Shown here piece by piece: positions 14,011-64,000 of a stretch of DNA of 64,000 bases. Position 1 is the first letter of the stretch. Each line of letters starts with the position of its first letter. The notes under the pieces are model-generated. The model saw only the letters and a list, made by a program, of their open reading frames with translations, did no database searches and was not told the origin of the DNA. Source of the stretch: Octopus sinensis (Eukaryota); contig NW_021833803.1 of assembly GCF_006345805.1 (NCBI RefSeq), positions 1 through 64,000 on the forward strand, in the 5' to 3' direction. The position numbers and the translations under genes were made by a program.

Positions 14011-14545
14011 GAAAGGGCTGGATCGGCGACCATCAAACGAGACACTCTCCAGAGTCCTTTTATATTTCCATTGCCAACATAGTTAAATCAGACTCAATAT
14101 TTGTCAATTATATACGTAGATTACTTCTATTGACAACATTTGGATGGAATAACATCCAAATTTTACAAGTACTACCAAAACTCCCTACAAGTCTATGATT
14201 CAACGCGTGCATATGTTCAGACAATTGTGATCAAAAAAAGCACTGGAGAGCATGCGCCCGGAGTACAAACTCTTACCTACAACGGCGAAGCATGCAATCA
14301 ATGAACGACTAAGTGAAGGAAGCAACCACCACGAGACATCCACTGAACCTATCAAGGGAAGAGACGCTGTATTCCGGCCCATGAATCTGGAGGAAGGAGG
14401 CGGATCGATAGCAAAGAGAAGGAAGTTGTAACCAAAATTCTCATGATAAGATATTTTTTCCATATCAATGAATTTACTAATTTGGATTTAAATAATTATT
14501 CCTTGACAGCATCAAGTCTATTTCTCGTTTATGTATGTGATACTA

Positions 14546-17570: not shown

Positions 17571-17802
17571 CCACACATCAAGACAATCGTAACAAAGATA
17601 TCGTCCGCGTTTTTTTTAGCTTATTAAATTTTTTATGCATACTAATGTTGATAAATTTTCAGCCCAGGGCGTATCAAAGCCACTGAAGGCCATAGTTTGA
17701 CCACCTCCTCTTTAGATAGCATTATTTTGTTTTAATTATTTTAGATTTAATTACATTTATTAATTTATTTTAAATAAAAATCATAGCATTAATTTCTTTT
17801 AA

Positions 17803-18562
17803 ATGCTTGACATACTTATCTTCATAGTCTTTCTTGATTTTTTCACTGCGAAGTCAAATTGTCCTTTGTCTAATAACGAAATGTGATGCCTAATTAATTT
17901 ATTATTATATATTCTAGTTCTAACTGTTTTTACAATGAATCATTAAAAAATGATAAATTGTACGAAATTGTAATTAAAAATGGAGTCACATTTACAGAAA
18001 ATCCACGATTTACGAATTTAATTTCTATTGATACATTGTAACCTTCGTAAATTATATTTAGTGAATGCGATGGTAACTCTTTGCACAAACTGGTTGAAGA
18101 TTCATTTAAAGGACTCAAATTTTTATGGATCATGTATATTGTTTTTTATATTCTATTGATATCTCCGTTTATGTAGTATGCTTCGTTACATCAATATCAA
18201 TACTTTTTCTGACATTCCACTTGAATTCATGTTTTATTAAAATAGTTAATCACATATTTAGGGATATGCCGAAAGGATCGACTTTTATTTCGTTCAATTT
18301 AAAGATAGATCTACTTATGTAAGATAAAATTATTGAAGATATCGTTTTAGAATTTCTATGTTTACTAATCAGCATCTCTGTCTTCTGGAAAATACTGCAC
18401 AACCAGTTGCGTTTGTGTTTTTTATTATTTCGTTTTAGATTCAAGCCTTCAAAAATAACACAAGTTGGATTAACAAACAAAATTTTTGTTGTGTCTTACG
18501 GAACATTACAGTTTATAGAATCTGATGGTAAAAACTGCTTGTTTAATAATAGTTTGCTCTAA
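17803..18562 (+). CDS. Secreted leucine-rich-repeat-like protein, copy A; 6 introns, all phase 2
   Basis: Removing six GT-AG introns of 24-43 nt gives an open frame: hydrophobic N-terminus MLDILIFIVFLDFFTAKSNCP, then LRR-like GNSLHKLVEDSFKGLKFLWIIMLRYININTFSDIP. Exon 3 is exactly 72 nt and phase 2-2, the classic LRR exon. Confidence 0.65.
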
Positions 18563-18750
18563 TTGCCAACCCACAATAACTAATAACATACTTTGTCCTG
18601 CTCAACTAAATCTAAGTTCGACCAAAAATATTAAATTAACATTTTTCTTGGAATAATTTTAATTTAACCTCATTCTGATTTTTTAATTTGATGAACTTTG
18701 ATTAATCAGTAGTAATTAAAAAAGCCGAAATCCCAATGACATTTCTTTTA

Positions 18751-19145
18751 CAAAGATCAAAGATCTTATCATTTCTAGTTTTTTTTAAAAAGGAACTTTA
18801 TTTCTACTGGGAACCTTGCAAACAACGCGGAGCGCGTAACACTTTATAAATAAAAAATTCCTCAAAGCATCACTTTTTGCACTCATTGAATTCGAAACGT
18901 CATCAATACTTTATACAAGACATCGGGAAAATGATTAATTACAGTAGAAATGAGCTATGGGAATCATCATCTTGATGAAGGCGCTGAGAGCAAAAAGTGA
19001 TGTTTTTAGATATTTTTATTTATAAAGTTTTATGCGCTCCGCGTTGTTCGCAAGGTGCCCAGTAGAAATAGAGTTCCTTTTTAAAAGGGTTTTTTTAGTT
19101 CCTTTTAGGTAAATCGAAAAACTAAAAATGATGAAATCTTCTTTG
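18751..19145. mobile_element. TA-flanked MITE with long (~150 bp) imperfect inverted arms
   Basis: TA|CAAAGA...TCTTTG|TA; arm ~18751-18885 is inverted at ~18985-19145; a homologous arm lies at ~35640-35808. Confidence 0.7.
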
Positions 19146-19211
19146 TATTTTTAAATCTAAAATAATTAAAACAAAATTATATTATCTACAGAGGAGGTGG
19201 CCAAATTAATA

Positions 19212-19660
19212 CAGTAAACTCTCTCGAATCCGCCATTTCTGTTCCTGAGCGAAATCTGGCGGATTCTAGAAGGGTTTTTATCGATTTTTAAATTATTTTC
19301 TAATAAACAAATGAATTTTTTAATCAAAATCAGTAATTTTAGTTTTTAATCTAGATTTTCTTAGTTTTTGACCAATATTTTTCCATGTCTGTCACATTCA
19401 CTTCAAAATAGTTTCTTAAGGTGTCGAATGCGCGAAAAGGATCTATGATAACCACATTTTCATTTTTGCTGGTCTAAATTAAATCTTCGTGATAGCCCTA
19501 TCGCAGGAAAAATTTATCTGAGAGGCAACTAATTACAAAGTACAAAACAAGTAAAGAAGCTGTTTAGTTAATTGCCTTAGATACAAATTCAGAAATTGGA
19601 TTTACTTCTTTTAAAGCTTCCAATGGGTGGCATGATAGATTTAAATTACGAAATGAGCTT
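19212..19660 (+). mobile_element. pogo/Tigger left end with decayed CENP-B-type HTH remnant
   Basis: TA|CAGTAAACTCTC terminus; FKASNGWHDRFKLR motif near 19610-19650; 19212-19465 is repeated inverted at 33555-33833. Confidence 0.6.
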
Positions 19661-20579
19661 TAATTCAGGTCTTCATCTATCCTCTACTACCAGCCTCTTT
19701 TTAAATAAATATTTTTCTTCAAGCCGGATGCAATCAGGTAGCGAGAAGCAAGATTGGGCGCTATCAGAGATCTCAATTTAATAAACGATGACAATCCTGG
19801 ATTACCATAGTTTATTGATGTTTTGACAAATTTTTTGTAGATCAGAGCGAGGCATTCTTTGGCTTGGCCATAAGTCACGTAATGTGTTCAGCTTGCGTTT
19901 GACTTTGGTGGAACTGAACTTCATGTGTTGGGTATTCTAAGGGTATACCAAAATTTTTAACTTATAATTCAACCTACTGCCAAATTCGGATAAGGAAATA
20001 TTAATTTTGAAAATATAATTTGTATCATCTTCTAGACCGCTTAAAATAAGTGATTCTTCACAAATATAATATTGATTATGCCAGGTCAATGAGTGTAATT
20101 TCTTGTTTAGGTCTAATATCATGAATTATTCTTATAAAAATTTTGACAATTATGGTTACACAAATTATAGGGTCATATTCAGAAATTGTAAAACATGGTT
20201 TTTATAGAAGAGGAAAAAAAAAGAGTTTGTGAACATAAATTCGCATAAATTATAATTCCATTAGTGCCGCGCATCAATGATTATGAGACTAGTCTTTTTT
20301 ACCTTTCTTAGTTGATGCCAGGCTCCAAAGATGCTGAGGTTTTTCCAATCCTGTAGTCTTTTCACTGGCTTTCGGTCATAATTTAGAACTTGGACGACCT
20401 CGGAACTTTATTCTAGCTGTTTTGAAGAATTCTTTCATGGTAATCATTACCTACTCTATTCTTTAAATCTATCTAAAAAATTTCCTGCGCATTTCCATGA
20501 TTAAGCTTATGGCTTCAGAAAAGAATTTTTCTTGTTTAGGCTTTATAAAATCGCCGATACACTGACGATATTATGGAAA

Positions 20580-24739: not shown

Positions 24740-25519
24740 TTATTTAATTGAAAATTTTTTTAGTAGCATTATGAAACTAATACAACATACTAAGATATTT
24801 TTTCCAGAAAAGATCGAAAAATATCCTTTTAAATTAAATGACAGATATAATCTGACAATCAAGAAAATAAAATTGATCCCCAAAATAGACGAAAATATAG
24901 CAATAAAACATTTTTCACTATAATCGTCTCTATTTAGAGCCCACTGTTTATAATTGGTACAATATATTATCACAATTAGAGAGATAAATATGAAGCTTAA
25001 CGTCGTTATTAAAGGAAATGGGATTATTTGTGATAAAGATTCAATACCATGACGTGAATAAACAAGACTATGAAAATCAATTGAGTCGAGAAAATCGACA
25101 AATGCTAAATATTTGCCATAATACGTGTTTTTAGGATTATATATACTTGTAATTATGTTCAAAATATAAAATAAAAATCCTAAACATATTTCTATCACAC
25201 AAATGATTGTAGGTGAAACAGAGTAGAGAAATGAAAATTTAACAAATGTCATCACAAACAATAACTCAAAAGATAAAAATAACAGCAATATTTGATGTTT
25301 AATTATTTTAATTTTATGACTTGATTTTTTAAAAGAACGGTGAAAAATAATAAAAATAGTAAAAATCGAAATGCAAATAAAATCACCAAACAACCATAGC
25401 AAATGTATAGAATTTTGTTTAACTAGTCTTTCAGATAGAAATCCTGTTTGCCCTCCATATATACAAATAAACAAAAAACATAAAGTTAAATATTCAACTT
25501 TAGTCAAATCAGAATTCAT
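24740..25519 (-). CDS. TMEM121/CECR6-family multipass membrane protein, 259 aa, intronless
   Basis: About 7 hydrophobic segments; LWLFGDF, FVDFLDSIDF, INFIFLIVRL and IFSGKNIL resemble TMEM121 motifs (VGD, LDLLDLLDM, IFVGKNVV) in the same order. Confidence 0.7.
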   Translation of the reverse strand: MNSDLTKVEYLTLCFLFICIYGGQTGFLSERLVKQNSIHLLWLFGDFICISIFTIFIIFHRSFKKSSHKIKIIKHQILLLFLSFELLFVMTFVKFSFLYSVSPTIICVIEICLGFLFYILNIITSIYNPKNTYYGKYLAFVDFLDSIDFHSLVYSRHGIESLSQIIPFPLITTLSFIFISLIVIIYCTNYKQWALNRDDYSEKCFIAIFSSILGINFIFLIVRLYLSFNLKGYFSIFSGKNILVCCISFIMLLKKFSIK

Positions 25520-26569: not shown

Positions 26570-26642
26570 GCCCCGATGGTGAAGTGGTTATCACGTTCGC
26601 CTCACACGCGAAAGGTCCTGGGTTCAATTCCCAGTCGGGGTA
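26570..26642 (+). tRNA. trnV-CAC: tRNA-Val (anticodon CAC)
   Basis: 73-nt cloverleaf: acceptor stem GCCCCGA/TCGGGGT, D stem GTGA/TCAC, anticodon stem TTCGC/GCGAA with CAC at 26603-26605, T arm CTGGG-TTCAATT-CCCAG; TTTT terminator directly downstream. Confidence 0.95.
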
Positions 26643-26714: not shown

Positions 26715-29700
26715 CTAGCTCGGCAGCTCGCTTCGCTCACCGCGACCTAGCTCCTGCGGAGGGCCTGTTTTATCAAACAACTATAAGTTTATGTAGATGT
26801 ATAAAACTACCTGGTTTAATGTAACCCTATTCTATCGCCTGTTGATAAACGATGTTTGTCGTCCGTCCTTCCTTGGCATATATGAATAAATTTTCTCTTC
26901 TGCCTACCCTCGAGCATCCCACATACAGCTGTCCATGTGAAAAGCACTCACTCTCTAAAAATAACCCAACTACCTTTAATGACTGTCCCTGGGCCTTGTT
27001 TATTGTCATTGCAAAACTCATCCTCAAAGGAAATTGCAGCCTTTTAAATCTAAATGGTAATTCATCAGAAATTATCGGAATTCGTGGAATATAAACATCC
27101 TCACCTCTATACTTACCTGTGAATATCGTCGCCTCTATTACGTTAGCCATCAAATTTTTGATAACTAACCTCGTTCCGTTGCATAATTTAGGTGGCGCAA
27201 GATTTCGTAATAAAACCACTGGAACGCCTATCTTTAACTTTAAAAGATGATTCGGCATTCCAGAGGGATCTAAGGAGTTTAAAAATTCAATCCGGTTGAA
27301 TTTGTAGAAAATAACAAAAAAATAAAAAAAACAAATAAAAATAAATAATTTAAAAACAAAAGAAATGAAAAAACAAAAAAAAACTTTAAAAATTTGTAAA
27401 AAAGTATAAACAAAAAAAATCTCTGCCGCCACGGCAACAGCCTGTCTAATTTTTTTGACAGCCAGTTAAGATAATGCTTAAGAGCCTTTATAGTCCGGAG
27501 ATTTAGCTTAGTGACCTTGATTAGACAAACCACTGGCGGAGATGGGGCAGCCGGAGATGCGGCAGGCGGAGATGCGGCAGGCAGAGTAGCAGCAGCCAAA
27601 AAAGCGACACACAAAAAAGATTTAATTACCTTAAGCTGACCGTTTTTTCTTCAGCTTCGTTTTTCCTCCTTCGGTTATCTATTTAAAAAATTATTTTTGA
27701 ATAATAAAAAATATTAGGAAAAAAGAGGCATACAGAAAATAAATTCTATCTTTACGAAAAACTTCTTTTCTTAAGGTCGTCTTCCCTCCTTCAGTTATCT
27801 ATTGAAAAAATTATTTTTGAATAATAAAAAAGTTTAGGAAAAGAGGCATACCGAAAATAAATTCTATCTTTACGAAAAACTTAACTAAATAGTTAATATT
27901 TTTACGCAAATTCTTCTGATTGCGCTGTCAATTGGTGGTAAATTGTGTTAATGATTTTGCTAATGTGGTTTCAACTATCAAAGTGTTTTTCAAAATCTGT
28001 TAATTGCACACTCTATTCAAGGTCGTGCAATCTGTAATTGCACATTCTGTCAAAGTCAAATATGATAATAGGTTTAATTTTGAATGGTATATGCATTTAA
28101 TTTTAAAGAGAAAATCATAAGATGAATTGAATTTCTTTATCGCGAATAATTGGGAGTTCATCATTGTTAATATTCTCGCTGTCGTTTTCATCAAGGATAT
28201 TTTTAATACGTGAGATTTTTAATGGACCTCATCATGAATGTCGAGGACATTAACGTTGTTCATTTTAATCAAATGCAGAAAATAATTTTTTGATTTTTTG
28301 GCGGAAAGGTTTTAAGGACCTCATCATGTAAGTCGAGGACATCGTAGTTGTTCATTTTAACCAAAATGCAGAAAATTTTTTTTAATTTTTTTTGGGGGGA
28401 AGGTTTTAAGGACCTCATCATGTAAGTCGAGGACATCGTAGTTGTTCATTTTAACCAAAATGCAGAAAATTTTTTTTTAATTTTTTTTGGGGGGAAGGTT
28501 TTAAGGACCTCATCATGTAAGTCGAGGACATCGTAGTTGTTCATTTTAACCAAAATGCAGAAAATTTTTTTTTAATTTTTTTTGGGGGGAAGGTTTTAAG
28601 GACCTCATCATGTAAGTCGAGGACATCGTAGTTGTTCATTTTAACCAAAATGCAGAAATTTTTTTTAATTTTTTTGGGGGGAAGGTTTTAAGGACCTCAT
28701 CATGTAAGTCGAGGACATCGTAGTTGTTCATTTTAACCAAAATGCAGAAAATTTTTTTTTGATTTTGTTTGGGGGGGAAGGTTTTAAGGACCTCATCATG
28801 TAAGTCGAGGACATCGTAGTTGTTCATTTTAACCAAAATGCAGAAATTTTTTTTTAATTTTTTTTGGGGGGAAGGTTTTAAGGACCTCATCATGTAAGTC
28901 GAGGACATCGTAGTTGTTCATTTTAACCAAAATGCAGAAAATTTTTTTTAATTTTTTTGGGGGGAAGGTTTTAAGGACCTCATCATGTAAGTCGAGGACA
29001 TCGTAGTTGTTCATTTTAACCAAAATGCAGAAATTTTTTTTAATTTTTTTTGGGGGGAAGGTTTTAAGGACCTCATCATGTAAGTCGAGGACATCGTAGT
29101 TGTTCATTTTAACCAAAATGCAGAAAATTTTTTTTTGATTTTGTTTGGGGGGGAAGGTTTTAAGGACCTCATCATGTAAGTCGAGGACATCGTAGTTGTT
29201 CATTTTAACCAAAATGCAGAAAATTTTTTTTTAATTTTTTTTGGGGGGAAGGTTTTAAGGTCCTCATCATGTAAGTCGAGGACATCGTAGTTGTTCATTT
29301 TAACCAAAATGCAGAAAATTTTTTTTTGATTTTGTTTGGGGGGGAAGGTTTTAAGGACCTCATCATGTAAGTCGAGGACATCGTAGTTGTTCATTTTAAC
29401 CAAAATGCAGAAATTTTTTTTTAATTTTTTTTGGGGGGAAGGTTTTAAGGTCCTCATCATGTAAGTCGAGGACATCGTAGTTGTTCATTTTAACCAAAAT
29501 GCAGAAAATTTTTTTTTAATTTTTTTGGGGGGAAGGTTTTAAGGACCTCATCATGTAAGTCGAGGACATCGTAGTTGTTCATTTTAACCAAAATGCAGAA
29601 AATTTTTTTTAATTTTTTTTGGGGGGAAGGTTTTAAGGACCTCATCATGTAAGTCGAGGACATCGTATTGCCAATTTGAAGTTGGTGTGCACACATAGAC

Positions 29701-29839: not shown

Positions 29840-30060
29840 CAGTTTATAAGGTAAAGAAATCAAGTGAGAATTACTTCTCATGACCGCCTGAAGAAAGACG
29901 AGGTCGAGAAATGACATAAATACGATCTATTAACAGGGCATTGTCCATTCTTTACAACGCTCAAGTGAAAATAATTCCAATGGTTTTCACTTGGGACGAG
30001 GTCTTTTCCAAGTTTTTTAAGAACTATATTGAAAAGTTGGCTATCGAAGACTGGATAATC
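29840..30060 (+). pseudogene. Decayed RLE-type LINE fragment, preceded by long poly(T) runs at 29781-29832
   Basis: RITSHDRLKKDEVEK*HKYDLL..KIIPMVFTWD. Confidence 0.6.
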
Positions 30061-30087
30061 TTATTTTATTTATATTTATTCTGAAAA

Positions 30088-32590
30088 TTTTTTTTTTTTT
30101 TTTCAATTAAAAGAAAAGAAAATGGAACAGGAAGTCAGCTACTAGCCGCAGAGAGAATAGAGAAACTGTTCCCCCTGAGTACGGCTATTGAGACGCGCTC
30201 AAAAAGCCGATTGACCTCGCGGGGGTCGTTTCTAATCCTCCCGAGGTGACGGCCTCTCTCGGTGAGAAAACGTAGCGTGGCTGGGCCGAATGTGCCTGAT
30301 GTTTCGACTGAAACAGGCACAAAGAGGAATCTGTCGGCGAGCGAGGCGTACTTGTCTTTCTTCCGGGTCTCTGCCCTCTTCGCCGCTGTGCCAGCTTCGA
30401 TCGCGGACGCGAGAAGGCATGTTGACGCAAAAGTGTCAGAGCATGTCGCGTCCCAGACGATCGCTTTGCCGCACTTGAACGGGAAGAGCGAGACGCCGTC
30501 CGGCCTCTTGCCATCGCCCCTGTTAAGGCCAGAGGGCTCCAGCTGGCACGGGATGCCGGTTGCCTCGAGCAGACGCTTTATTATGGAATTAAGCTGTCCG
30601 TGCCTGGGGAACCTCCCAGGGCATTTGCGGCAGGAGAGCGGGTGTAGACCTTTGCGGTCTATATGAGCCCCGCAACGGCATTGGTGAGGCTGGCAAATGT
30701 CCAAGCCGAGTCGGAGAGATATTCCGATTCTTAAACAGTCTGGGTCCAGGAAGGTTCCAGCTGCAGGGGAAGGATAGGCGTTGATCCAGGCGCCAGTCCG
30801 TGGAGATGCTCCAGACAACAGACAAGCACGCCGGTGTTGGTCTCCGTGAGACAGTAAGTACCGGAAAGACTGAGAGCTGCTGATCTCCGTCCATTCGCGC
30901 ATAAGGCATAGGTCAACGGAGTTTTTAGTCCGCAATCTGTCCACAACGATGTGCCGTATGAAAGCTCTGAGTCCGTGAGCGATCCAGAGGGAGAAGGAAG
31001 GATCTGGACTACGAGAGGCATGCATCGGTGAGAAGAAGAAAGAAAGCATGGCAAGGAGAGAACCGAGGGGGCTTGGAATCCGAGACCCCCGTGCCTGATA
31101 GGCAGGATAGCCTGTTTCCAGCCCATTTCGTCAAAATGTACGTTTGAGATTTGAACGAGAGTATTCCTGAGCAGCGAATCGAATTCTCCGACTGCATCCG
31201 GGAATCGGAAACAGGGAGAAGTGCGAAGTGCGTACTCCAAACGAGGAAAGGCAAGAAAGTTCTTCAGTAGGAAGAAAGCCACATGGGCGTCGATGGATTT
31301 AAGAGTGTCGAATGATTTTTCCATATTAAGAAGTTTAGCGCGGAGGAAAGATGGGATTCCGGACGAGAATAGAGGCGTACCGAGAAGAGTAAGTTCTTCG
31401 GGCAGAACGGTGCGTATGGCTGGGAGATTATGGTCGAACAGGGGCTGGATTTCCAGAGTAAAGAGTGCATGGTCGTATCCTATATTGAAAATCTCTGATT
31501 TTTGTGGGTTCACGGTAAGGCCTATAGAAGCCAGTATCGGAGCCACATTGTTCAGGTCATTTACAACACTATCGGCCGGGCCTCCAATAGAGGCGTCGTC
31601 GAGGTACCAGACGTTGAGCTCAGAAGTGCACGAGCGGACCGCTTCATCGATGGCCAGCGAAAAAAGGAGAGGGCCGAGAGGATCGCCCTGTTGTACACCG
31701 GTGGCGGAAATAATGGTAGAAGAGCCGGAGATAAGAAGAGTAGGAGAGCCGTAGCTTTGGTGCACGAACCGATAAATGGATGGGCAACGAAGAAAGCAAG
31801 ATTCCAGCACAGAGTCGCGGCGGACACTGTTAAATGCGTTGGTAATGTCTAGTTTGACTAGAATTCGGGGATGTAAACTCTCGGTCACAAAGCGTCTGGC
31901 GGCATGCACCGCTGCCTCGCAGCCTGAGGAAACCCCAACTCCTAGCTGTAACGGGAGGAAAGCTTTTGCAAGTTCCGGGGAGACCGACCAGCAGGCGAGC
32001 TTTGAAGCCAGACGTCGGAAAATGTTCCCGACGGCGATAGGACGAACTCCGCCGTCTTTTTTGGAAAAAGGAAGCAGATGGGCGGAGAAAATGAGTCCAC
32101 GAGCGAATGCGGATAAGTTTGAAGATAAAAGGTTGTTGACAAGTTCCGTGATCGAGGTAAGGAGCAGCGAGCCTGTTGGGCCGATCAAGGGAGAGATGAG
32201 GTTGCGAAGGTGACTGGGGCGGAGCCCCTCAATGCCTGCACTGCTGCTAGGTGAAAAAGATTTGAGAGCGCGGCAGATCGCATCGTTGGTGAGTTTCGGG
32301 GGGGAGGGCGTGGAATCGACGGATGGAAAAGGCCTGAGGTCTACAGGGGCGGGAGGGTGTTTGCACTTCAAAGTGTTGATAACGTTTTTGGTCGATGGGA
32401 GTACTCCGCCATTGGAAGCCAGAACTCTCATAGCAGCTCTGGTGTCGCCCTCGATCAATTTGGAGAAGATACGAGGCCCAAGAGAGGCGGTGTCAAAGCC
32501 TGAAGTACCGGCGTTTGTACTATCGTCGGGATTGAAGCGCTTTGCGGCTTCGACATGACTGGCAAGGATCGAGCTTAGAAACTCGTCCTA
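30088..32590 (-). mobile_element. CRE-clade non-LTR retrotransposon (RT plus RLE), 5'-truncated, one frameshift near 30920, poly(A) tail
   Basis: GGVRPIAVGNIFRRL, LDITNAFNSVRR, GVQQGDPLGP, WYLDD; zinc-binding CRCG..H...C; RPDG..WDATCSDT; ERVSIAVLRGN; A15 tail about 30 nt after the stop. Confidence 0.92.
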
Positions 32591-33169
32591 TTTTATATTT
32601 TATAAAATAATGTATTCATTTTGTTTTAGTCTTAATCTGTAAAAAAAATCTGTATAGATCTTCACAAATTTTAAAAGAATGGATTAGTTCGCATTTTTCT
32701 CAGCATTACATTTCCTCCCGTTTTTATTGCGTTAAATTCTGTATTTTAGGAATCTTTGGCATTATGAAATCGCTAAAAAAAAACTTTTTTATAAGAATTA
32801 AAGACAAATTTATAGTATGACAAAAAGCAAGTTTTCAAAGGTTCTCAATTATGCTATGCACTAATACAGATGGATTCGACAAAAAATGCGATTGATGATT
32901 TGAAACCTTTTCTCTATATCGACCTGTATTAAAGTTCATTTCGTAATTTAAATCTTTCAAGCCACCAATTGGAAGCTTTAAAAGAAGTAAATCCAATTTC
33001 TTAAGCTGTTTCTAAGGCAATTAACGAAATAGTTCCTTTAATTGTTTTGTACTTTGTGATTAGTTGTCTTTCAGATAAATTACGAAAACAGACACTAGAA
33101 ATAACTTTAGATAATTTAAAAACATATAATCCATTCTAAGGCACGTTCGAGGAAATAAGACTACGCAGT

Positions 33170-33530
33170 TTAGGACGCTCTTCCAGCCTCGCGGATTGCG
33201 AAACAGTTGCCACGGATTACGGCAATGGAGAGGCGTTGAATAAGCCAAAAGGACTATCTCGGGTCTTCTCTTCCTTTGTCGATTCTTCTCTCCAAACCAC
33301 GTAAAATACAAAGCGACTTGGAGTCAAAAACCCCCAGAGCTCTCAACGGCGATGGGCGTGAAAATAAGATAAGAGACTTCAGCGCTATTAGAAGCGAAGC
33401 CTGGGTCGACAACCGACATGGCTAGGTTCCCGTTGGAGAATGTGTCACACCAGGTAGAATCCCATATAAGGGATTTTCCCTGCTCGAAGGGATATGTAGT
33501 TAAGCCAAATTGTTCCTCGGGATGGGGCTA
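33170..33530 (-). pseudogene. Decayed CRE-clade fragment
   Basis: KSLIWDSTWCDTFS..SAVESSGGF..ENRQRKRRPE..LLAYS. Confidence 0.55.
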
Positions 33531-33554
33531 TTGATCAAAAGTTAATTTATACCA

Positions 33555-33833
33555 GCAAAAATGAAAATGTGGTTATTGTAAATTCTTTTCGCGCATTCGA
33601 CACCTAAAGAAAATATTTTAAACTGCATGTGACAGACATGCAAACTTTAAACACGTTGGAAAATATTGGTCAAAAACTAAGAATATCTAGATTAAAAACT
33701 AAAATTACTGATTTTTGTGAATAAAAAATTTTTCATTTGTTCATAAGAAAATAATAAAAAAATGATAAAAACCCCTCTAGAATCCGCCAAAGTTCGGTCA
33801 GGAACCAAAAATGGCAGATTTAAGAGTTTACTG
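33555..33833 (-). mobile_element. pogo/Tigger terminal fragment, inverted copy of 19212-19465
   Basis: Ends GAGTTTACTG|TA; colinear by eye with the 19212 copy. Confidence 0.6.
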
Positions 33834-34127
33834 TATAAAACTTTGATTATGATTAAATATTTCAATTCTAAATACTTTGATAACTTTTAAGATAATTTTT
33901 TTATTATTTTAAAAATTAATCAAGAAAAAAACTTTCCTGAAAATTTTGAATATTGGTATTAATTGTTCAAGCAGGTCGAGGGGTAAAAGTTCCACAAATA
34001 CGACTTACTGACAAATGAACTGAAAGCTATCCACCAAGCGAAAGTGAAGATCGTCCCTATAGTTATGACCTGGGACGGGATTCTGTCGAAATTCTTCAAA
34101 AACTATCTGGAGACGCTTAGGGTAGAG

Positions 34128-35243
34128 CAGAGGTTTCCAAGCTTTTTTTTACGCGCCTCCCTTAGAGAAAAAGTACAATCTTGCGCCTCCCTTTATATTC
34201 CATAATATAATACAATTATTATTTTATCAAAAACAATTTTTTAAAACAAAAGTTAATGAGATAATTTTTTTTCCATCTTGGCGCAAAGTTTTTCAAATCT
34301 TGGTGTCATCGCAGAGAGTGCTACTCTTAGCTCATTAGTCACTACTAAACGAGTTCGATATTTAGATTTAATTGCAGCTAGTGCAGAAAATCCAGTTTCG
34401 CATAAATATGAAGTAGCAAATGGCAACAAAACTTTCATTGCTTTATTCGACAAAATTTCATATTCCGTTCTTACATTCAACCAAAAAGAAATTAGCGGTT
34501 CTCTCTCAAATTTTTGTTTCAATAATGTATCGCATGACAATTCTATCAATTTTTCTTTTTCAAAAGTTGTCAATGCAAATTGATTATTCTTCATCAAAAA
34601 TGGATTCTGTATCCATTCGAACATTTTACAGTCGAGATCTTTAAAATAGTGAGCAAAATGCTTCAACAAACATCCAAATGTTCAGCAAATATGTCTTTGT
34701 TTAACGATTTCGTTTGGTTATCAAACTCTTCTAATTTTCTTTTAAAAATTCTTCAGACTTATGGACATGTTCAGAATGCATCGTTTCAAAATGTCTTCTT
34801 AATTTGCATGGCCTCATACTATCTGCTGCAAGTGTTTTGAGGCAAAGCAAACAGAGGGGTTTTTCCATAGAATCACAAAGATACGTGTGAATCCTAACAA
34901 TAAGTAAGATGGAAAGTATTTTCTTGTCTTTGGAGTGGTATTGATTATATTCCAATCATTTTGATTTTTTGAACCATCGTCAAAATCTTTATTATTCGTG
35001 AATTTTCTTTTGCAACCACTCAAGAATTTATTCATGTGTTAAAATTATTTAATTGTCTAATAAATTAAATAATTTTTGAAAAAATATAATTTTTAAATTA
35101 ATAACTCTTATTATCGGAATATAGTCACGTTTTTTACATAGATATAATTTTCTAAAAAATGTTTCTGAAATACTTTTCGCGCCTCCCTTGACACGAGTCA
35201 ACGCCTCCCTAGGGAGGCGCGCCTCCCCATTTGGAAACCTCTG
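34128..35243 (-). mobile_element. hAT Buster/Charlie-type element (1116 bp), internally deleted
   Basis: TIRs CAGAGGTTTCCAA and TTGGAAACCTCTG; 8-bp TSD GGGTAGAG with central TA; BED-finger remnant (CLLC..MRPCKLRRHFETMH) and dimerisation domain (PFATSYLCETGFS); splits an RLE-LINE fragment (YLETLRVE|DRVKAYIQ). Confidence 0.92.
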
Positions 35244-35854
35244 GGGTAGAGGACAGGGTAAAAGCATATATCCAGACACTAGTGTTGCGGGAGACCTCAG
35301 AGAGCAAAATACTATAAATGATGTAAAAATACTACAAATGGCGAAAACGGAAACCGAATAACTATTAATTCGTTTTATTTGTTTGTCAGTGTCTCACTAG
35401 AAAAATTTTATGTATAGTATTTAACTGAAACAACATTGTTACCGATGATAAATGATATGCTGATGCATGATTAATCTGTATTTTATAGCGACTTTAAGTT
35501 TACGTAGGGAGAGAATTGTTTGATTGTTGCTGCAAAAATAACGATCGAAATTCATTGCCAGAACCATGATGATTTCCATGGCTCATTTCTACTGTAAGTA
35601 ATCATTTCCCGAGTACTTGTATAAAGTTTTGATGAATGCGATGAGAGCAAAAAGTGATGTTTTGAGGAATTTTTTATTTATAAAGTTTTACTCGCTGCGT
35701 GTTGTTCGCAAAGTGCCAAGTAGAAATAGAGTTCCTTTTTAAAAGAGCTTTTTTAGTTCCTTTTAGGTCAATTGGAAAATTAAAATGATGAAATCTTCGA
35801 TCTTTGTAACAGAAAGGTCATTTTGATTTCGGCTTTTTTAATTACTACTGATAA

Positions 35855-36080
35855 CGACCTTATCAGGAGAGCCCTGGAAGTCGCCGGAATCCCTTCCCTG
35901 CTTGAACCCTCTGGGATCGATCGGGGGACGGAAAAAGGCCTGACGGGATCACTGTGTTTCCCTTCAACAGGGGGAAGCCTCACAGGCGACACCCGCGAAT
36001 CAAGATGGTTTTTCGAGCGGATATCCATTGCGATAGTACGCTCTAATTCTTTCTTGATTGCGTCGACTTCCCGCCCATGA
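35855..36080 (+). pseudogene. CRE-clade fragment inserted in the duplicated segment
   Basis: RRALEVAGIPSLLEPSGIDRG..WFFERISIAIVRSN. Confidence 0.7.
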
Positions 36081-36241
36081 AGCTTTCAACACTTGACCGA
36101 ATCCTTTTTTTCGTAATAAACCAATCGAATTAAAAAAATCAAAGTTCAGAACAAGGTTAAATTAAAATTATTCCAAGAAAAATGTTAATTTAATATTATT
36201 TGGTCAAACTTAGATTTAGTTGAGCCGGACAAAGTATGTTA

Positions 36242-37019
36242 TTAGTTAGTTTGGGTAGGCAAGTAGTGCAAACTACTATTAAACAAGCAGTTTTTACCAT
36301 AAGATCCTATAAACTGTAATGTTCCCTGAGACACAACAAAATTTTGTTTTGTTAATCCAAATTGTATTATTTTTGAAGGCTTGAATCTAAAACGAAATAA
36401 TAAAAAACACAAACGCAACTGGTTGTGCAGTATTTTCCAGAAGACAGAGATGCTGATTAATAGACATATGAATTCTAAAACGATATCTTCAATAATTTTA
36501 TCTTACACAAGATCATCTATCTTGAAATTGAACGAAATAAAAGTCGATCCTTCTGGCATATCGCTAAAAATTTGATTAATTATTTTAATAAAACATGTAT
36601 TTAAGTGGAATATCAGAAAAAGTATTGATATTGATGTAACGAAGCATACTACAGAAATGGAGAAGCCAATAGAATATAAAAAACAATATACATGAGCATT
36701 AAAAATTCGAGTCCTTCAAATGAATCTTCAACTAGTTTGTGCAAAGAGTTACCATTGCATTCACTAAATATAATTTCCAAAGGTTACAATCTATAAATAG
36801 AAATTAAATTCGTAAATCGTAAATTTTCTGTAAATGTGACTCCATTTTTAATTACAATTTGATCCAATTTATTATTTTTTAAGGTTTCATTGTAAAAACA
36901 GTTAGAACTAGAATATATAATAATAAATTAATTAGGCATCACATTTCGTTATTAGACAAAGGACAATTTGTCGCAGTGAAAAAATCAAATAAGACTATGA
37001 AGATAAGTATGTCAAGCAT
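36242..37019 (-). CDS. Secreted leucine-rich-repeat-like protein, copy B (inverted paralog of 17803-18562)
   Basis: Same six phase-2 intron positions; open frame MLDILIFIVLFDFFTATNCP...GNSLHKLVEDSFEGLEFLML...LHYLPTQTN*. Confidence 0.65.
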
Positions 37020-37324
37020 TTAAAAGAAATTAATGCTATGATTTTTATTTAAAATAAATTAATAAATGTAATTAAATCTAAAATAATTAAAACAAAATAA
37101 TATTATCTAAAGAGAAGGTAGCCAAACTATGGCCTTCAGTGCCTTTGATACGCCCTGGGCTGAAAATTTACCAATATTAGTATGCATAAAAAATTTAATA
37201 AGCTAAAAAAACGCGGACGATATCTTTGTTACGAATGTCTTTGGCTTTGTAGGTAAGAATTCGTACTCCGGGCGCATGCTCACTAATGTTTTTTGATCAC
37301 AATTGTCTGAACATATCACGCGTT

Positions 37325-39090
37325 AAGAATAGAATAGAATAGTGTTTATTGAGCGTAAAGAAAAAGAAAAACAAGGAAGAAATCATCGGCGGGGAGATAA
37401 AAAACAAGGCACCGAAGTGTCTCTTTCCATGCGTATCCCCAATACTAGTCATGTTTGACGACAATTCTCCAAGACCATCCGGATCGTGGGCACAGAGGAT
37501 TCTTGTGAGTCTTTTAACCTTCCGTCAAGTTGTACTCCGTAAGCCAATTTCATAGCGAAACGTCTTGTCTTTTCCAACTGTTCGATCAGGTAGTCACTCT
37601 CCTCCGTACCGTACCAGCCCTCGTAGCCATATGTGAGGACTGGCTGCACACACGTTTTGTATACGTAGATGTACGTTTCCGGATCCAGATGGAACCTGGT
37701 TAAGCTTTTGAGGATCCTCACACTCCTCTTTCTCTGATTTGCTATATGCTCTACGTACGAGCCACGACAGTTAATGGTTGCTCCCAGGTAAGAAAGATTT
37801 TTTCTTTTCGAGAGATCCATCACATAGCTACTCATCGCATATGCACAAGACTCCGCATAGCGACTCCCTCTCCGCAACCATGAAATGGTGCTTTTCTCCG
37901 GTGCTAGAGTCAAACCCTTCTCTTTAGTCCACATCTTTAGCGTTGCAATGTATGATTTCAGTCGTCTCCAAGACTGCGATATCCTTTTCGAGGTATCCAT
38001 GACCAGGATATCGTCAGCATAGATAACGAGCTTGCCAGTACGTGTCGACGGCAGAGGAATGTCCGCCAAGAAGAGGTTGAACAGAAGTGGACTCAAGATA
38101 GATCCCTGCGGGACTCCCCTTCTAAGTTCCACACACCCCGATAGGCGGTTTCCACAGCGGACAAATGATTGTCTTCCTGACAAGAAGCTCTCCAGCCATC
38201 GATAGGTCTTTATCCCGGCTCCGATGTCATGGATTCTGGAGAGTAGGCCCAGGTGCCACACGCTATCGAAGGCTTTGGCCAGATCCAGACACACCACAGT
38301 TAGCCATGCTTCATTTCTGTCAGCACGGGATAATTGGTGCTCTAACTCCCTGAGGCAGTCCCCTGTGGATCTTCCTCCACGAAATCCCCATTGTTCGGGT
38401 AAAAGCAAATTTTGTGATTCTATATGACCAGAGAGTCTGTTAAAGACAATCTTTTCCATTGTCTTAGAGAAAGCACAAATGAGGCTAATTGGCCGGTAGT
38501 TCTGTGCCAGCAGTGTCGATTTACCAGATTTTGGAATCATTCGAACAATCGTATGCTTCCACGCCGATGGAAGGTGTCCGAACGTCCAGCTGGCGTGAAA
38601 CAACATAGTCAATGCTCGTATCAAAATTTCAGGGGCCTTCTTTAACAACTTCGGAGGGATGTAGTCGAAGCCAGGCGCCTTGTTCTTCAACCCAGCAATT
38701 GCCCTTTTAACCTCTTCCTGTGTTATCGCCCCACATAATGGTCCCTCCGATAATTGCGAAGAGCCAAGCTTCTTCACAATTCGGTCATAAGTCCCTCGTG
38801 GAACGGTAGATTCGACCTCTTGAACCTGACTAAGTTGGTTCCTGAGTACTTCCGGGGTACGATCAGAGGAGATATATTTCCCGTCTGGTTCTTTTAGTGA
38901 AATTTCAAATCCTTTGGCATCATTTCTGGAAAGGCGTTGATATGCTTTCCAGAAATTAGGGTTTCGCTTATCCAGTTTTCTGCATTCAGACCTCCATTTA
39001 CTTTCGACCTCAGTCTTGGCCATTTTTGCAATAGTAGATTTTATCTTGTCGATCTCCAATTTCAGGCGACATTTGATTGACTCAACCCGT
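37325..39090 (-). mobile_element. 5'-truncated Jockey/I-like LINE; RT ORF 37449-39059
   Basis: YRPISL, QWGFRGGRS, LDLAKAFDSVWH, GVPQGSILSP, IYADD; 3' AATAAA followed by a (CTATT)n tail. Confidence 0.9.
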
Positions 39091-39183
39091 TAAGTCATGA
39101 CTTTTAGGGAGTTTTGGTAGTGCTTTTAAAATGTTTCAATAGAAGTAATCTACGTATATAATTGACAAAAATTTAGTCTAATA

Positions 39184-40392
39184 CAGTACGACCCCGGTTT
39201 GGGGCAGACCCCATGGGTGGGGCACCCTCGGGTTTTGGGGCACCCCCGCTTTTAGGGGCAGTTTTTGAAAACAGTAAATTTTTCATTCTATTATTTATTT
39301 TTGATGACCCCGGTTTGGGGCACTTATTTAATTTATTTAATTACAAAATGTTAGTTTATTTATTAATTATTAATTAATACTATTATTTCACGTGTTTATT
39401 TTGACTTTAGTATGGTTCGTAAAAAGAATTCAAAGATTAATTATGAAACAAAAATTAAAATCGCTAAAGATATAAAACATGGTCAATTTTCAGAAAGAGA
39501 TCTTGCTAAAAAGTATAAAACGAGCAAAGGTATCTTTTTTAACTAATTATTAATTACAGGTACTATTTCTCGCATTAAACAAAATTTTGTTTATTATTTT
39601 GACGCGGGATTAACTGAATCCGATAGAATCAAGGAATCACATGATCCAAATAATGAATTAGATAGATTAGTTTTTGAAACTTTTCTACGTCTGAGAGATG
39701 AATTTCTTCCAATTTCTGGAACTATCTTAAAACTGATTGCAAAAAAATTATCTAAAAAGATAAATTATGAATCATTTAAGGCATCAAATGGATGGCTAGA
39801 CCGGTTCAAGAAAAGACACGAGTTGCTATTTAAAACTATAAGTGGAGAAAAGAATTCATCTGACCTTTCTACGGTTTCCAATTTTTTTGCTGATTATGAC
39901 AACTGTTTGGAAACTGTAGGAAGTGAAACTGTAGGAAGTGACAACTGTTTGGAAACTGTAGGAAGTGAAAATGAGGACAAAATTACTTATGATGGATATG
40001 AATCTAAAAAATCATCAATTAAAGAAATCATAAACATCGTGAATTCTCTAGAAGATAATATTTTCAGTACATGTCCACAATTTTTGAAAATCTACTACGA
40101 ATTTAGAAAAAACCTATCAGGAGAACTGAAAAAAAACCAATTCGGTGAGAAAATTACTGATTACTTTTAATAGTATTTTTTGTTGGATTTATTAAAATTT
40201 TTAAATTTTATTAAGAAAGGACTATGTTAGAATTTTTATTAATATTAAATAATTTTAATTTATAGTCTAAAATGCAATAAAAATCTATTGAGGAGAAAAT
40301 AAAAGCAAAAAATCTTTACCCTCGCATTTTGGGGCACCCCCGCTTTTTGGGGCACTATGATAAAAATGCTGCCCCAAACCGGGGTCGTACTG
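39184..40392 (+). mobile_element. pogo/Tigger element (1209 bp) lacking the DDE domain
   Basis: 23-bp TIR CAGTACGACCCCGGTTTGGGGCA with TA TSD; subterminal TTTTGGGGCACCCCCGC repeats. Confidence 0.9.
39412..40170 (+). CDS. 242-aa CENP-B/Tigger DNA-binding-only protein with a 30-nt intron (39530-39559)
   Basis: 118 + 611 nt = 243 codons with no internal stop after splicing; HTH_psq-like region, then FKASNGWLDRFKKRH..FKTISGE, an acidic tail and terminal KITDYF; no DDE motifs. Confidence 0.75.
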
Positions 40393-55526: not shown

Positions 55527-56835
55527 CCTCTGTGATTGCACATTCTGTCAAAGTCAAATATGATAATAGCTTTAATTTTGATTCATGGTCGATAATGATA
55601 TATGCATTTAATTTTAAAGAGAAAAACATAGGATGAATTGAATTTTCTTTATCGCGAATAATTGGGAGTTCATCATTGTTAATATTCTCGCTGTCGTTTT
55701 CATCAAGGATATTCTTAATACGTGAGATTTTTGCCTTGAAGGTTTTAATGGACCTCATCATGAATGTCGAGGACATTCGCGTTGTTCATTTAATCAAAAT
55801 GCAGAAAATAATTTTTTGATTTTTTGGGGGGAAGGTTTTAAGGACTTCATCATGTAAGTCGAGGACATTGTAGTTGTTCATTTTAACCAAAATGCAGAAA
55901 ATTTTTTTTTAATTTTTTTTGGAGGGAAGGTTTTAAGGACTTCATCATGTAAGTCGAGGACATTGTAGTTGTTCATTTTAACCAAAATGCAGAAAATTTT
56001 TTTTTTTTTTTTGGGGGGGAAGGTTTTAAGGACTTCATCATGTAAGTCGAGGACATTGTAGTTGTTCATTTTAACCAAAATGCAGAAAATTTTTTTTTAA
56101 TTTTTTTTGGGGGGGAAGGTTTTAAGGACTTCATCATGTAAGTCGAGGACATTGTAGTTGTTCATTTTAACCAAAATGCAGAAAATTTTTTTTAATTTTT
56201 TTTGGGGGGGAAGGTTTTAAGGACTTCATCATGTAAGTCGAGGACATTGTAGTTGTTTATTTTAACCAAAATGCAGAAATTTTTTTTAATTTTTTTGGGG
56301 GGGAAGGTTTTAAGGACTTCATCATGTAAGTCGAGGACATTGTAGTTGTTCATTTTAACCAAAATGCAGAAAATTTTTTTTAATTTTTTTGGGGGGGAAG
56401 GTTTTAAGGACTTCATCATGTAAGTCGAGGACATGTAGTTGTTCATTTTAACCAAAATGCAGAAAATTTTTTTTTAATTTTTTTGGGGGGGAAGGTTTTA
56501 AGGACTTCATCATGTAAGTCGAGGACATTGTAGTTGTTCATTTTAACCAAAATGCAGAAAATTTTTTTTTAATTTTTTTTGGGGGGAAGGTTTTAGGACT
56601 TCATCATGTAAGTCGAGGACATTGTAGTGTTCATTTTAACCAAAATGCAGAAAATTTTTTTTTTATTTTTTTGGGGGGAAGGTTTTAAGGACCTCATCAT
56701 GTAAGTCGAGGACATCGTATTGCCAATTTGAAGTTGGTGTGCACACACAGACAGACAGACAGACAGACACACAGACAGACACACAGACAGACAGACAGAC
56801 AGACAGACACACACCATACCATTTTATTATTAAGA
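55527..56835 (-). mobile_element. Helitron derivative 3, 5' part only
   Basis: A|TCTTAATAATAAAATGGTATGG 5' end, (CTGT)n and internal sequence matching 28030-28300; no matching 3' end found. Confidence 0.85.
55737..56718. repeat. Tandem array, about 10-11 units of ~93 bp
   Basis: Same unit as 28215 but with array-specific GACTTC and ACATTG; the last unit has GACCTC and ACATCG. Confidence 0.95.
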
Positions 56836-60863: not shown

Positions 60864-63701
<2,838 letters not shown>

Positions 63702-64000
63702 ATTCTTCTTTGCATCACAAATATTAATATTTTTAAATAAATTTTATTTGTTTTAATAAGAATAATCAATTTAGTTTAAAGATAATCATGTATTAGATGC
63801 TACAATTTAGTTCCGTGTAATTTATATCGACTTCCATCCCTGTTTTCATTTTTGACTGGTCCATAGCGGGAATTAGGGAGAAATAAGGATTTAAAGGTCT
63901 TAAATATTATTTTTATCATTTAAAGTACCTTTTTTTGTATAATTACTTTTTTATTAATTATATAAACTGCGTATGCAACAATACAAAGGACCGGTGCTAG

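What the first reader, a model, noticed from the sequence alone, without database searches (positions are those of the whole stretch)
17803..18562. Paralogous secreted LRR-like genes with identical introns but rapidly changing exons
Seen: this gene and its inverted paralog at 36242-37019 are invisible in the ORF track but splice into ~190-aa proteins with a hydrophobic N-terminus, six phase-2 introns and a 72-nt LRR-type exon. Introns 1, 5 and 6 are identical between copies. In exons 2-3 I count 12 amino-acid-changing codons and only 1 silent-only codon (for example DKLYE/NKLDQ, IDT/IYR, FKGLKFLWI/FEGLEFLML). Copy A stops 7 codons earlier (TAC to TAA). Knowledge: phase 2-2 exons of 72 nt typify extracellular LRR genes. 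Inference: a young, diversifying family of secreted or surface proteins in a probable parasite, a candidate host-recognition or immune-evasion repertoire spreading in transposon-rich DNA.
Basis: partly seen in the sequence, partly recalled or inferred. Interest (0 to 1): 0.78.

Follow-up and report, generated by a model that had tools for sequence, protein, structure and literature searches.

The report
Inverted pair of small LRR genes
Two inverted copies of a small, probably secreted leucine-rich-repeat protein gene sit in a transposon-rich animal genome with very short introns; both copies are intact and differ mainly at predicted binding-surface residues, but two copies are too few to prove adaptive diversification.

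Summary
Copy A (17803-18562, +) and copy B (37019-36242, -) each splice through six GT..AG, phase-2 introns of 24-43 nt. The products are 188 and 194 aa, with a hydrophobic N-terminus.

- **LRR identity:** the proteins match only LRR ectodomains in the PDB (LRIG1 E=3.6e-7, LGR4 E=2.4e-6). A shuffled control finds nothing.
- **Introns:** a neighbouring TsaD/Qri7-type gene has eight introns of 25-34 nt, so such introns are normal in this genome. Among animals they are reported only from myxobolid myxozoans and Dicyema, both parasites.
- **"Identical introns, fast exons" is overstated:** introns 2-4 are 10% diverged, like the exons. Introns 1, 5 and 6 lie in or beside identical tracts of 111, 93, 85 and 37 nt that also cover exon and promoter sequence, which suggests gene conversion.
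- **Selection:** dN/dS is 1.7, not significantly above 1 but clearly above 0.5. Neutral decay would keep both genes intact only about 2% of the time. Replacements concentrate on LRR concave-face positions (8/19 against 2/30 scaffold positions).
- **Family:** only two copies are visible, the arms of one inverted segmental duplication.

Verdict: a real, lineage-specific LRR gene pair, with suggestive but unproven surface diversification.

The parts
17803..18562 (+). Copy A gene, ATG to TAA. Exons 17803-17882, 17918-18037, 18062-18133, 18177-18230, 18262-18318, 18351-18410, 18439-18562; product 188 aa.
   Evidence: Splice model and translation. LRIG1 E=3.6e-7 and LGR4 E=2.4e-6.
36242..37019 (-). 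Copy B gene. Exons 37019-36943, 36907-36788, 36763-36692, 36648-36595, 36563-36507, 36474-36415, 36386-36242; product 194 aa.
   Evidence: Splice model. LGR4 E=6.2e-5, with the match contiguous across the exon 2/3 and 3/4 junctions.
18062..18133 (+). The 72-nt exon 3, phase 2-2, encoding exactly one 24-residue LRR unit (FECDGNSLHKLVEDSFKGLKFLWI).
   Evidence: Exon design compared with PMC11378527.
17580..19671 (+). Arm A of the inverted segmental duplication: the gene plus 223 nt upstream and about 1.1 kb downstream. The downstream part includes a MITE-like palindrome (18783-19086) and a pogo-like fragment.
   Evidence: Collinear inverted blocks with 6.9% substitution divergence in the gene block and 10-11% in the distal blocks.
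32921..37241 (-). Arm B of the inverted duplication. It is longer because of insertions at about 35852-36135, 33839-35566 and 33081-33507.
17721..17831 (+). Identical tract 1 (111 nt): 82 nt of proximal 5' flank plus the first 29 nt of the CDS. B equivalent is about 37101-36991.
   Evidence: Run-length analysis; P(maximum run >=111)=0.013.
17855..17939 (+). Identical tract 2 (85 nt): end of exon 1, intron 1 and start of exon 2.
   Evidence: P(third-longest run >=85) was 0 in 20000 permutations.
18366..18458 (+). Identical tract 3 (93 nt): last 45 nt of exon 6, intron 6 and first 20 nt of exon 7.
37239..39200 (-). LINE (RT ORF 37449-39059). Its 3' end abuts the 5' edge of the A-B homology in copy B.
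   Evidence: RVT_1 E=5e-36. A second copy of the LINE 3' end lies at 14192-14290. The upper boundary near 39200 is approximate.

Best explanation
These are two paralogous, probably functional genes for a small (188/194 aa), lineage-specific, extracellular-type LRR protein. The protein has a signal-like hydrophobic N-terminus, a two-cysteine cap, about five to six LRR units (one of them encoded by a 72-nt phase-2 exon) and a roughly 45-residue C-terminal tail with no detectable homology.

The host is an animal genome with ultra-short introns, most likely a dicyemid or a myxobolid myxozoan. The pair arose by an inverted segmental duplication of at least 2.1 kb, and the arms have since diverged by about 10%. 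Patches of the gene (promoter and signal peptide, intron 1 and its surroundings, exon 6 to exon 7) were later homogenised, most simply by gene conversion between the inverted arms.

In the remaining sequence the hydrophobic LRR scaffold is conserved, while replacements, many of them charge-changing, concentrate on the solvent-exposed 'x' positions of the LxxLxLxxN beta-strands. This is the face LRR proteins use to bind ligands. The two copies are therefore inferred to encode binding proteins with diverged specificities.

Shown here: the duplication, the splice model, the LRR homology, the uneven divergence, and the site pattern. Inferred: secretion, gene conversion, positive rather than merely relaxed selection, and any role in host interaction.
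For: - **Duplication and model:**
- **LRR homology:** A matches LRIG1 at E=3.6e-7 over residues 15-128 and LGR4 at E=2.4e-6. B matches LGR4 at E=6.2e-5. The A+B profile matches LRIG1 at E=3.7e-6. A shuffled control gives 0 hits at E<=10.
- **Intron regime:** the neighbouring TsaD/Qri7-type gene (42305-40879, -) has 8 introns of 25-34 nt, and its identity is confirmed at E=8.8e-44. In both genes the exons are richer in G+C than the introns.
- **Reading frame kept:** under a neutral simulation of 56 substitutions, the ATG, open frame and all 12 splice dinucleotides survive in only 2.2-2.7% of trials. The one clear exonic indel is 3 nt. A cluster in exon 7 is most simply read as compensating +1/-1 run-length changes.
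- **Site pattern (LRIG1-derived register, residues 17-101):** concave positions 2, 3, 5, 7 and 8 are changed at 8/19, scaffold positions at 2/30 and others at 4/36. Enrichment P=0.002; concave against scaffold Fisher P=0.008. Positions 2 and 3 changed in three consecutive units (Y42D/E43Q, D65Y/T66R, W89M/I90L); P=1.8e-5 raw and 4e-4 to 5e-3 after correcting for the choice of register.
- **Strength of selection:** omega of 0.5 or less is rejected (P=0.002).
- **Uneven identity:** three identical tracts spanning exon and non-coding sequence, P<5e-5.
Against: - dN/dS of 1.69 is not significantly above 1 (Fisher p=0.33; spectrum-based one-sided P=0.058). Near-neutral drift cannot be excluded.
- There are only two sequences and no outgroup.
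- No expression data are available.
- Pfam gives no LRR hit at E<=10.
- Copy A has a nonsense change 7 codons before B's stop.
The position test was also framed after seeing the data.
- Two of the three position-2/3 pairs are also the last two codons of exons 2 and 3, so a mutational or junction-related cause of the clustering is not excluded.
- The identical tracts could reflect nucleotide-level constraint rather than conversion.
- Exon 6 has an alternative splice solution.
Confidence: 0.55

Rival explanations
1. Neutral or near-neutral decay. A once-functional LRR gene was duplicated, and one or both copies are now drifting without constraint as young pseudogenes. The replacement excess is simply the mutational expectation in AT-rich codons.
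For: - About 76% of random substitutions would be replacements, so 39:6 overall (P=0.058) and 12:1 in exons 2-3 (P=0.14) are not significant.
- Omega of 1 is not rejected.
- Outside the identical tracts, exon divergence (about 11%) equals that of introns 2-4 (10.2%) and of the distal arm blocks (10-11%).
- Copy A has a premature TAA.
- There is no expression evidence and no database homologue.
Against: - Both copies keep the ATG, the open frame and all 12 splice dinucleotides, which happens in about 2% of neutral trials.
- The exonic indel is in frame.
- Replacements avoid scaffold positions (2/30) and concentrate on concave positions (8/19), which neutral decay does not predict.
Confidence: 0.27
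2. Truncated fragments of a larger LRR receptor gene. The pair would be duplicates of the 5' part (signal peptide, cap and a few LRR exons) of an LGR-like or LRIG-like parent gene, produced by exon-level duplication and not an independent gene family.
For: - The best PDB matches are LGR4 and LRIG1 ectodomains.
- The exon design of 72 nt with phase 2 is the one described for gonadotrophin-receptor LRR exons (PMC11378527).
- The C-terminal roughly 90 residues have no homologue at all.
- Copy B abuts a LINE 3' end.
Against: - Both copies have their own ATG directly preceded by an in-frame TAA, a shared conserved 5' flank and a terminal exon with a stop.
- No transmembrane or further LRR exons were found nearby.
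- PDB similarity is at the level of the generic LRR motif and does not show orthology.
Confidence: 0.1
3. Not a gene: a chance spliced ORF in repeat DNA, or an assembly artefact or uncollapsed alleles.
For: Free choice of GT..AG introns of 20-60 nt gives long spliced ORFs almost anywhere in the window, even antisense to LINEs. There is no Pfam hit.
Against: - The LRR matches are specific, run across exon junctions, and vanish on shuffling.
- Intron sizes match those of a verified host gene.
- The copies are inverted, about 18 kb apart on one contig, 7% diverged and differently flanked. This fits neither alleles nor a hairpin-type chimera.
Confidence: 0.03

Closest known systems
Ectodomain LRRs of LRIG1 and LGR4/5 (vertebrate extracellular 'typical' LRR proteins)
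   Same: The 24-residue LxxLxLxxNxLxxLxxxxFxxL units are the best and only significant class of PDB sequence matches. Both have an N-terminal signal-like peptide and a cysteine-containing cap.
   Different: The proteins here are only about 190 aa with about 5-6 units. They lack Ig domains, a 7TM domain and a recognisable LRRCT. Pfam LRR models do not score. The similarity is at motif level and does not show orthology.
Gonadotrophin-receptor (LHCGR/FSHR/TSHR) and brown-algal ROCO LRR exon design
   Same: One LRR per exon of about 72 nt, with all introns in phase 2 (PMC11378527). Here exon 3 is exactly 72 nt and all six introns are phase 2.
   Different: Only one exon is a clean 72-nt unit; the others are 54-60 nt, or 120 nt, which is possibly two fused units. 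The introns are 24-43 nt rather than kilobases. There is no evidence of exon shuffling or alternative splicing.
Diversifying LRR recognition families (plant R-gene and RLP xxLxLxx hypervariability, mosquito APL1/LRIM, lamprey VLR); comparison from general knowledge, not tested here
   Same: Replacements concentrate on solvent-exposed beta-strand positions while the scaffold is conserved. The mosaic of identical and diverged tracts is suggestive of gene conversion.
   Different: Only two copies are known here. Omega is not significantly above 1. There is no somatic assembly, no NB-ARC, TIR or coiled-coil partner domains, and no functional data.

Membership tests
LRR superfamily (extracellular 'typical' 24-residue type) | Tandem LxxLxLxxNxLxxLxxxxFxxL units detectable by sequence | tested here: met
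   phmmer and hmmsearch against PDB: the top matches are all LRR ectodomains, with E from 3.6e-7 to 6e-5, covering residues 15-131. A shuffled control gives 0 hits. Units are listed.
LRR superfamily (extracellular 'typical' 24-residue type) | Match to curated Pfam LRR models (LRR_8, LRR_4, LRRNT, LRRCT) | tested here: not met
   hmmscan against Pfam-A at E<=10 gives no LRR family for either copy. This is probably because the repeats are few, short and divergent, but it lowers certainty.
LRR superfamily (extracellular 'typical' 24-residue type) | Curved solenoid fold | not testable with these tools
   Structure prediction refuses spliced sequences.
LGR / glycoprotein-hormone receptor family | LRR ectodomain encoded by phase-2 exons of about 72 nt | tested here: met
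   Exon 3 is 72 nt and all six introns are phase 2. The family's design is as cited in PMC11378527.
LGR / glycoprotein-hormone receptor family | Rhodopsin-type 7TM domain following the ectodomain | tested here: not met
   The ORF ends at 188/194 aa. The C-terminal 91 residues have no PDB match. The only strongly hydrophobic window is the N-terminus. This is not a member of the family.
Classically secreted proteins | Cleavable N-terminal signal peptide | tested here: inconclusive
   Residues 1-16 are the most hydrophobic segment (Kyte-Doolittle 3.0) and are followed by small residues (TA/KS). However, the n-region has no positive charge and D occurs at positions 3 and 12. No signal-peptide predictor was available.
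Diversifying (positively selected) multigene family | dN/dS significantly above 1, overall or at a class of sites | tested here: inconclusive
   Overall omega is 1.69, p=0.33, with an approximate 95% range of 0.7-5. Concave-face enrichment has P=0.002, but the test is post hoc and rests on two sequences.
Diversifying (positively selected) multigene family | Multiple paralogues | tested here: not met
   tblastn of both proteins against the window finds only the two copies. The protein database and a metagenome scan find no relatives. The rest of the source genome could not be searched.

The most novel reading that the evidence does not exclude
The pair would be the visible tip of a larger, lineage-specific repertoire of secreted LRR proteins in a dicyemid or myxobolid parasite. 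The ligand-binding face of these proteins would be diversified by positive selection together with segmental gene conversion between paralogues, giving a mosaic of constant and variable tracts, and the proteins would serve in host recognition or immune evasion. No such system has been described in either lineage.
Probability: 0.18. Interest if true: 0.65.

Novelty: new member of a known kind. Interest (0 to 1): 0.36.

Why it matters
Dicyemids and myxobolid myxozoans are extremely reduced parasites, and the molecules they use at the host interface are almost unknown. A lineage-specific, apparently secreted LRR protein that has been duplicated, and whose predicted binding face differs between copies, is a reasonable candidate for such an interface molecule.

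The locus also gives a clean example of how 24-43-nt introns hide real genes from ORF-based scans.

In itself, though, a duplicated small LRR gene with surface-biased replacements is a familiar evolutionary pattern. With two copies and no expression data it remains a lead rather than a discovery.

Tried and rejected
- **Homologue searches.** The protein homology search with copy B found nothing at E<=10, and the metagenome locus scan with the A+B alignment found nothing. Pfam gave no LRR hit.
- Structure prediction, the representative-protein search and the exact contig look-up all refuse spliced proteins.
- **Organism identification failed.**
  - The TMEM121-like ORF found no homologue.
  - The best LINE RT hit is only 25% identical.
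  - Four window ORFs are not on record.
  - PDB matches of the arginine-kinase-like gene do not separate a spiralian from a cnidarian origin.
  - Rfam found only one tRNA.
- **The ORF as evidence.** I considered using the spliced ORF itself as proof of a gene and rejected it. A dynamic-programming search shows such ORFs are easy to obtain here.
- **LINE 3' transduction.** I considered this as the origin, because copy B abuts a LINE 3' end. I rejected it as unsupported: introns are retained, there is no poly(A) at the arm end, and copy A has no LINE sequence upstream.
- **TE cargo.** I considered this because of the 58-nt inverted repeat at 17693-17750 and 19151-19208. The A-B homology runs beyond that repeat and copy B lacks the right-hand copy, so it is not supported.
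- **Literature.** Searches for LRR families in dicyemids or myxozoans found nothing relevant.

Full report
**1. What is in the sequence**

The window is AT-rich (about 29-40% G+C) and dense in animal-type transposons. These include LINE RT/APE ORFs, a Tc1/mariner HTH and Helitron/PIF1 fragments. The region 17580-18689 (+) matches 37241-36135 (-) at 92.7% identity over 1111 nt. Further collinear inverted blocks follow: 18705-18970 with 35852-35566, 19206-19515 with 33839-33507, and 19511-19671 with 33081-32921. These extend the duplicated arms to 17580-19671 and 37241-32921. Arm B is longer because of insertions. About 13 kb of unique sequence lies between the arms. A LINE 3' end (37239-37333; second copy at 14192-14290) abuts the 5' edge of the homology in arm B.

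**2. The gene model**

| Copy | Exons | Product |
|---|---|---|
| A (+) | 17803-17882, 17918-18037, 18062-18133, 18177-18230, 18262-18318, 18351-18410, 18439-18562 | 188 aa |
| B (-) | 37019-36943, 36907-36788, 36763-36692, 36648-36595, 36563-36507, 36474-36415, 36386-36242 | 194 aa |

The introns are 35, 24, 43, 31, 32 and 28 nt. All are GT..AG and all are phase 2. Exon 3 is 72 nt. No unspliced ORF here exceeds 76 aa.

I tested whether such a model could arise by chance. A dynamic-programming search allowing any GT..AG intron of 20-60 nt finds long 'spliced ORFs' nearly everywhere, even antisense to LINEs. The open frame alone is therefore weak evidence. Three independent observations rescue the model.

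- **LRR homology.** The spliced proteins match only LRR ectodomains in the PDB.
  - Copy A matches LRIG1 at E=3.6e-7 over residues 15-128 and LGR4 at E=2.4e-6.
  - Copy B matches LGR4 at E=6.2e-5, with an ungapped alignment running across the exon 2/3 and 3/4 junctions.
  - The A+B profile matches LRIG1 at E=3.7e-6.
  - A shuffled copy B finds nothing at E<=10.
- **Intron regime.** The same search recovers a bona fide host gene at 42305-40879 (-). It is TsaD/Qri7-type (E=8.8e-44 against PDB) and has eight introns of 25-34 nt. Introns of 24-43 nt are therefore the norm here.
- **Base composition.** Exons are richer in G+C than introns in both genes: 29.5% against 21.2% here, and 34.8% against 16.5% in the TsaD/Qri7-type gene.

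Pfam does not score the repeats. The C-terminal 91 residues have no PDB match. Exon 6 has an alternative solution with a 54-nt intron and retention of intron 6. It is less plausible because it departs from the genome's intron sizes.

**3. The organism**

I could not identify it directly. The literature states that, among 51 animal genomes, median intron lengths below about 30 nt occur only in myxobolid myxozoans and in Dicyema japonicum. Both are obligate parasites (PMC13644364). D. japonicum has 36.7% G+C, 49% repeats, abundant LINEs and about one gene per 13 kb (PMC6736024), which resembles this window. The presence of a mitochondrial-type t6A gene argues, by inference, against Henneguya salminicola, which lacks a mitochondrial genome.

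**4. How the two copies differ**

| Region | Differences | Divergence |
|---|---|---|
| Exons | 46/564 | 8.2% |
| Introns (all) | 10/193 | 5.2% |
| 5' flank | 9/222 | 4.1% |
| 3' flank | 11/127 | 8.7% |

Exons do not differ significantly from introns (p=0.20) or from all non-coding sequence (p=0.10). Introns 1, 5 and 6 are identical, but introns 2-4 carry 10 differences in 98 nt.

The real signal is patchiness. There are three identical tracts, each spanning exon and non-coding sequence:

- 111 nt at 17721-17831, covering promoter and the start of the CDS;
- 85 nt at 17855-17939, covering the end of exon 1, intron 1 and the start of exon 2;
- 93 nt at 18366-18458, covering exon 6, intron 6 and the start of exon 7.

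No permutation out of 20000 gave a third-longest run this long. Intron 5 lies in a shorter 37-nt identical run at 18318-18354.

Outside these tracts the gene region is about 9-10% diverged (my arithmetic), like the distal arm blocks at 10-11%. The simplest reading is one duplication with about 10% neutral divergence, followed by gene-conversion patches between the inverted arms. This is an inference; local nucleotide-level constraint is the alternative. 'Identical introns, fast exons' is therefore a mis-description.

**5. Selection**

- **Overall rate.** Nei-Gojobori counts are Sd=6, Nd=39, S=113 and N=445, giving dN/dS=1.69. This is not significantly above 1 (p=0.33). Omega of 0.5 or less is rejected (P=0.002), and the approximate range is 0.7-5. 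Ordinary purifying selection is excluded; neutrality is not.
- **Reading frame kept.** Placing 56 random substitutions on either copy leaves the ATG, the frame and all splice dinucleotides intact in only 2.2-2.7% of trials. The one clear exonic indel is 3 nt. A cluster in exon 7 (AACAAACAAAATTTTTG against AACAAAACAAAATTTTG) is most simply two compensating run-length changes. This last point is an inference, because three substitutions would also explain it.
- **Where the replacements fall.** I took the LRR register from the LRIG1 alignment. Replacements fall on 8 of 19 concave-face positions (2, 3, 5, 7, 8), 2 of 30 scaffold positions (1, 4, 6, 9, 11, 14, 19, 22) and 4 of 36 others. Enrichment has P=0.002, and concave against scaffold has P=0.008.
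- **Recurrence.** Positions 2 and 3 changed in three consecutive units (Y42D/E43Q, D65Y/T66R, W89M/I90L). Raw P is 1.8e-5, or 4e-4 to 5e-3 after allowing for the choice of register.

The site test has three caveats. It was framed after seeing the data. It uses a sequence-derived register. Two of the three pairs are also the last codons of exons 2 and 3.

Taken together, the copies behave like functional genes with a conserved fold and a free or selected binding face, rather than like decaying pseudogenes. Positive selection as such is not demonstrated.

**6. Comparison with known systems**

The proteins work like small extracellular LRR binding modules. Their closest sequence relatives are generic, namely the LRIG and LGR ectodomains. 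They share the exon design of one LRR per 72-nt phase-2 exon described for gonadotrophin receptors and brown-algal ROCO genes (PMC11378527). They are not LGR family members, because there is no 7TM domain. The surface-biased replacement pattern resembles that of diversifying LRR recognition families (general knowledge). However, 'family' is unproven: only two copies are detectable in the window, and nothing related appears in the protein or metagenome collections.

**7. Verdict**

This is a real, lineage-specific pair of small LRR genes in an ultra-short-intron, very probably parasitic, animal genome. The evidence for binding-face diversification and for mosaic homogenisation is suggestive but underpowered. 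It is a new member of a known kind and of moderate interest.

Noticed in passing
window 28217-29667, 44710-45930, 55738-56719: Three arrays of a tandem satellite with a period of about 95 bp. The first and third arrays are about 93% alike; the middle one is about 78-82% identical to them.
   Followed up: no
window 29878-32556 (-): A G+C-rich (about 52%) retroelement in a genome of about 33% G+C. It has an RVT_1 domain only, with no APE domain. Its C-terminal region has a CCHC-like motif and a 'KRPDG' REL-endonuclease-like motif, suggesting an R2/NeSL-type element. The composition contrast is unexplained.
   Followed up: partly
window 42305-40879 (-): A TsaD/Qri7 (OSGEPL1)-type mitochondrial t6A synthesis gene with 9 exons and 8 introns of 25-34 nt (PDB 8iey_A E=8.8e-44). 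It is useful as an internal standard for this genome's splice regime.
   Followed up: yes
window about 13000-11214 (-): An arginine-kinase-type phosphagen kinase gene with many ultra-short introns. Its best PDB matches are Schistosoma taurocyamine kinase (4wo8, E=6e-171) and 4rf6 (two-domain arginine kinase, E=9e-156). The exon model comes from my dynamic-programming search and is only approximate.
   Followed up: partly
window 24740-25519 (-), 26570-26642 (+), 61931-64000 (+): A single-exon TMEM121/CECR6-like ORF (Pfam E=3.8e-8), a tRNA-Val(CAC), and the C-terminal part of a protein-kinase gene followed by a lysine- and glutamate-rich tail, running off the window.
   Followed up: no
window 18783-19086 (copy at 35566-35852): A MITE-like palindromic element of about 300 nt with long terminal inverted repeats, lying just downstream of each LRR gene copy.
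   Followed up: no
window 17693-17750 and 19151-19208: A 58-nt piece of the LRR gene's 5' flank is repeated in inverted orientation about 600 nt downstream of copy A's stop codon (90% identity). No counterpart was found in arm B. Its origin is unexplained.
   Followed up: partly
window 19590-19650; fuller copy about 39500-40170 (+): Pogo/Tigger-like transposase fragments with a CENP-B-type HTH ('FKASNGW.DRFK'). One of them lies inside the distal part of duplication arm A.
   Followed up: no
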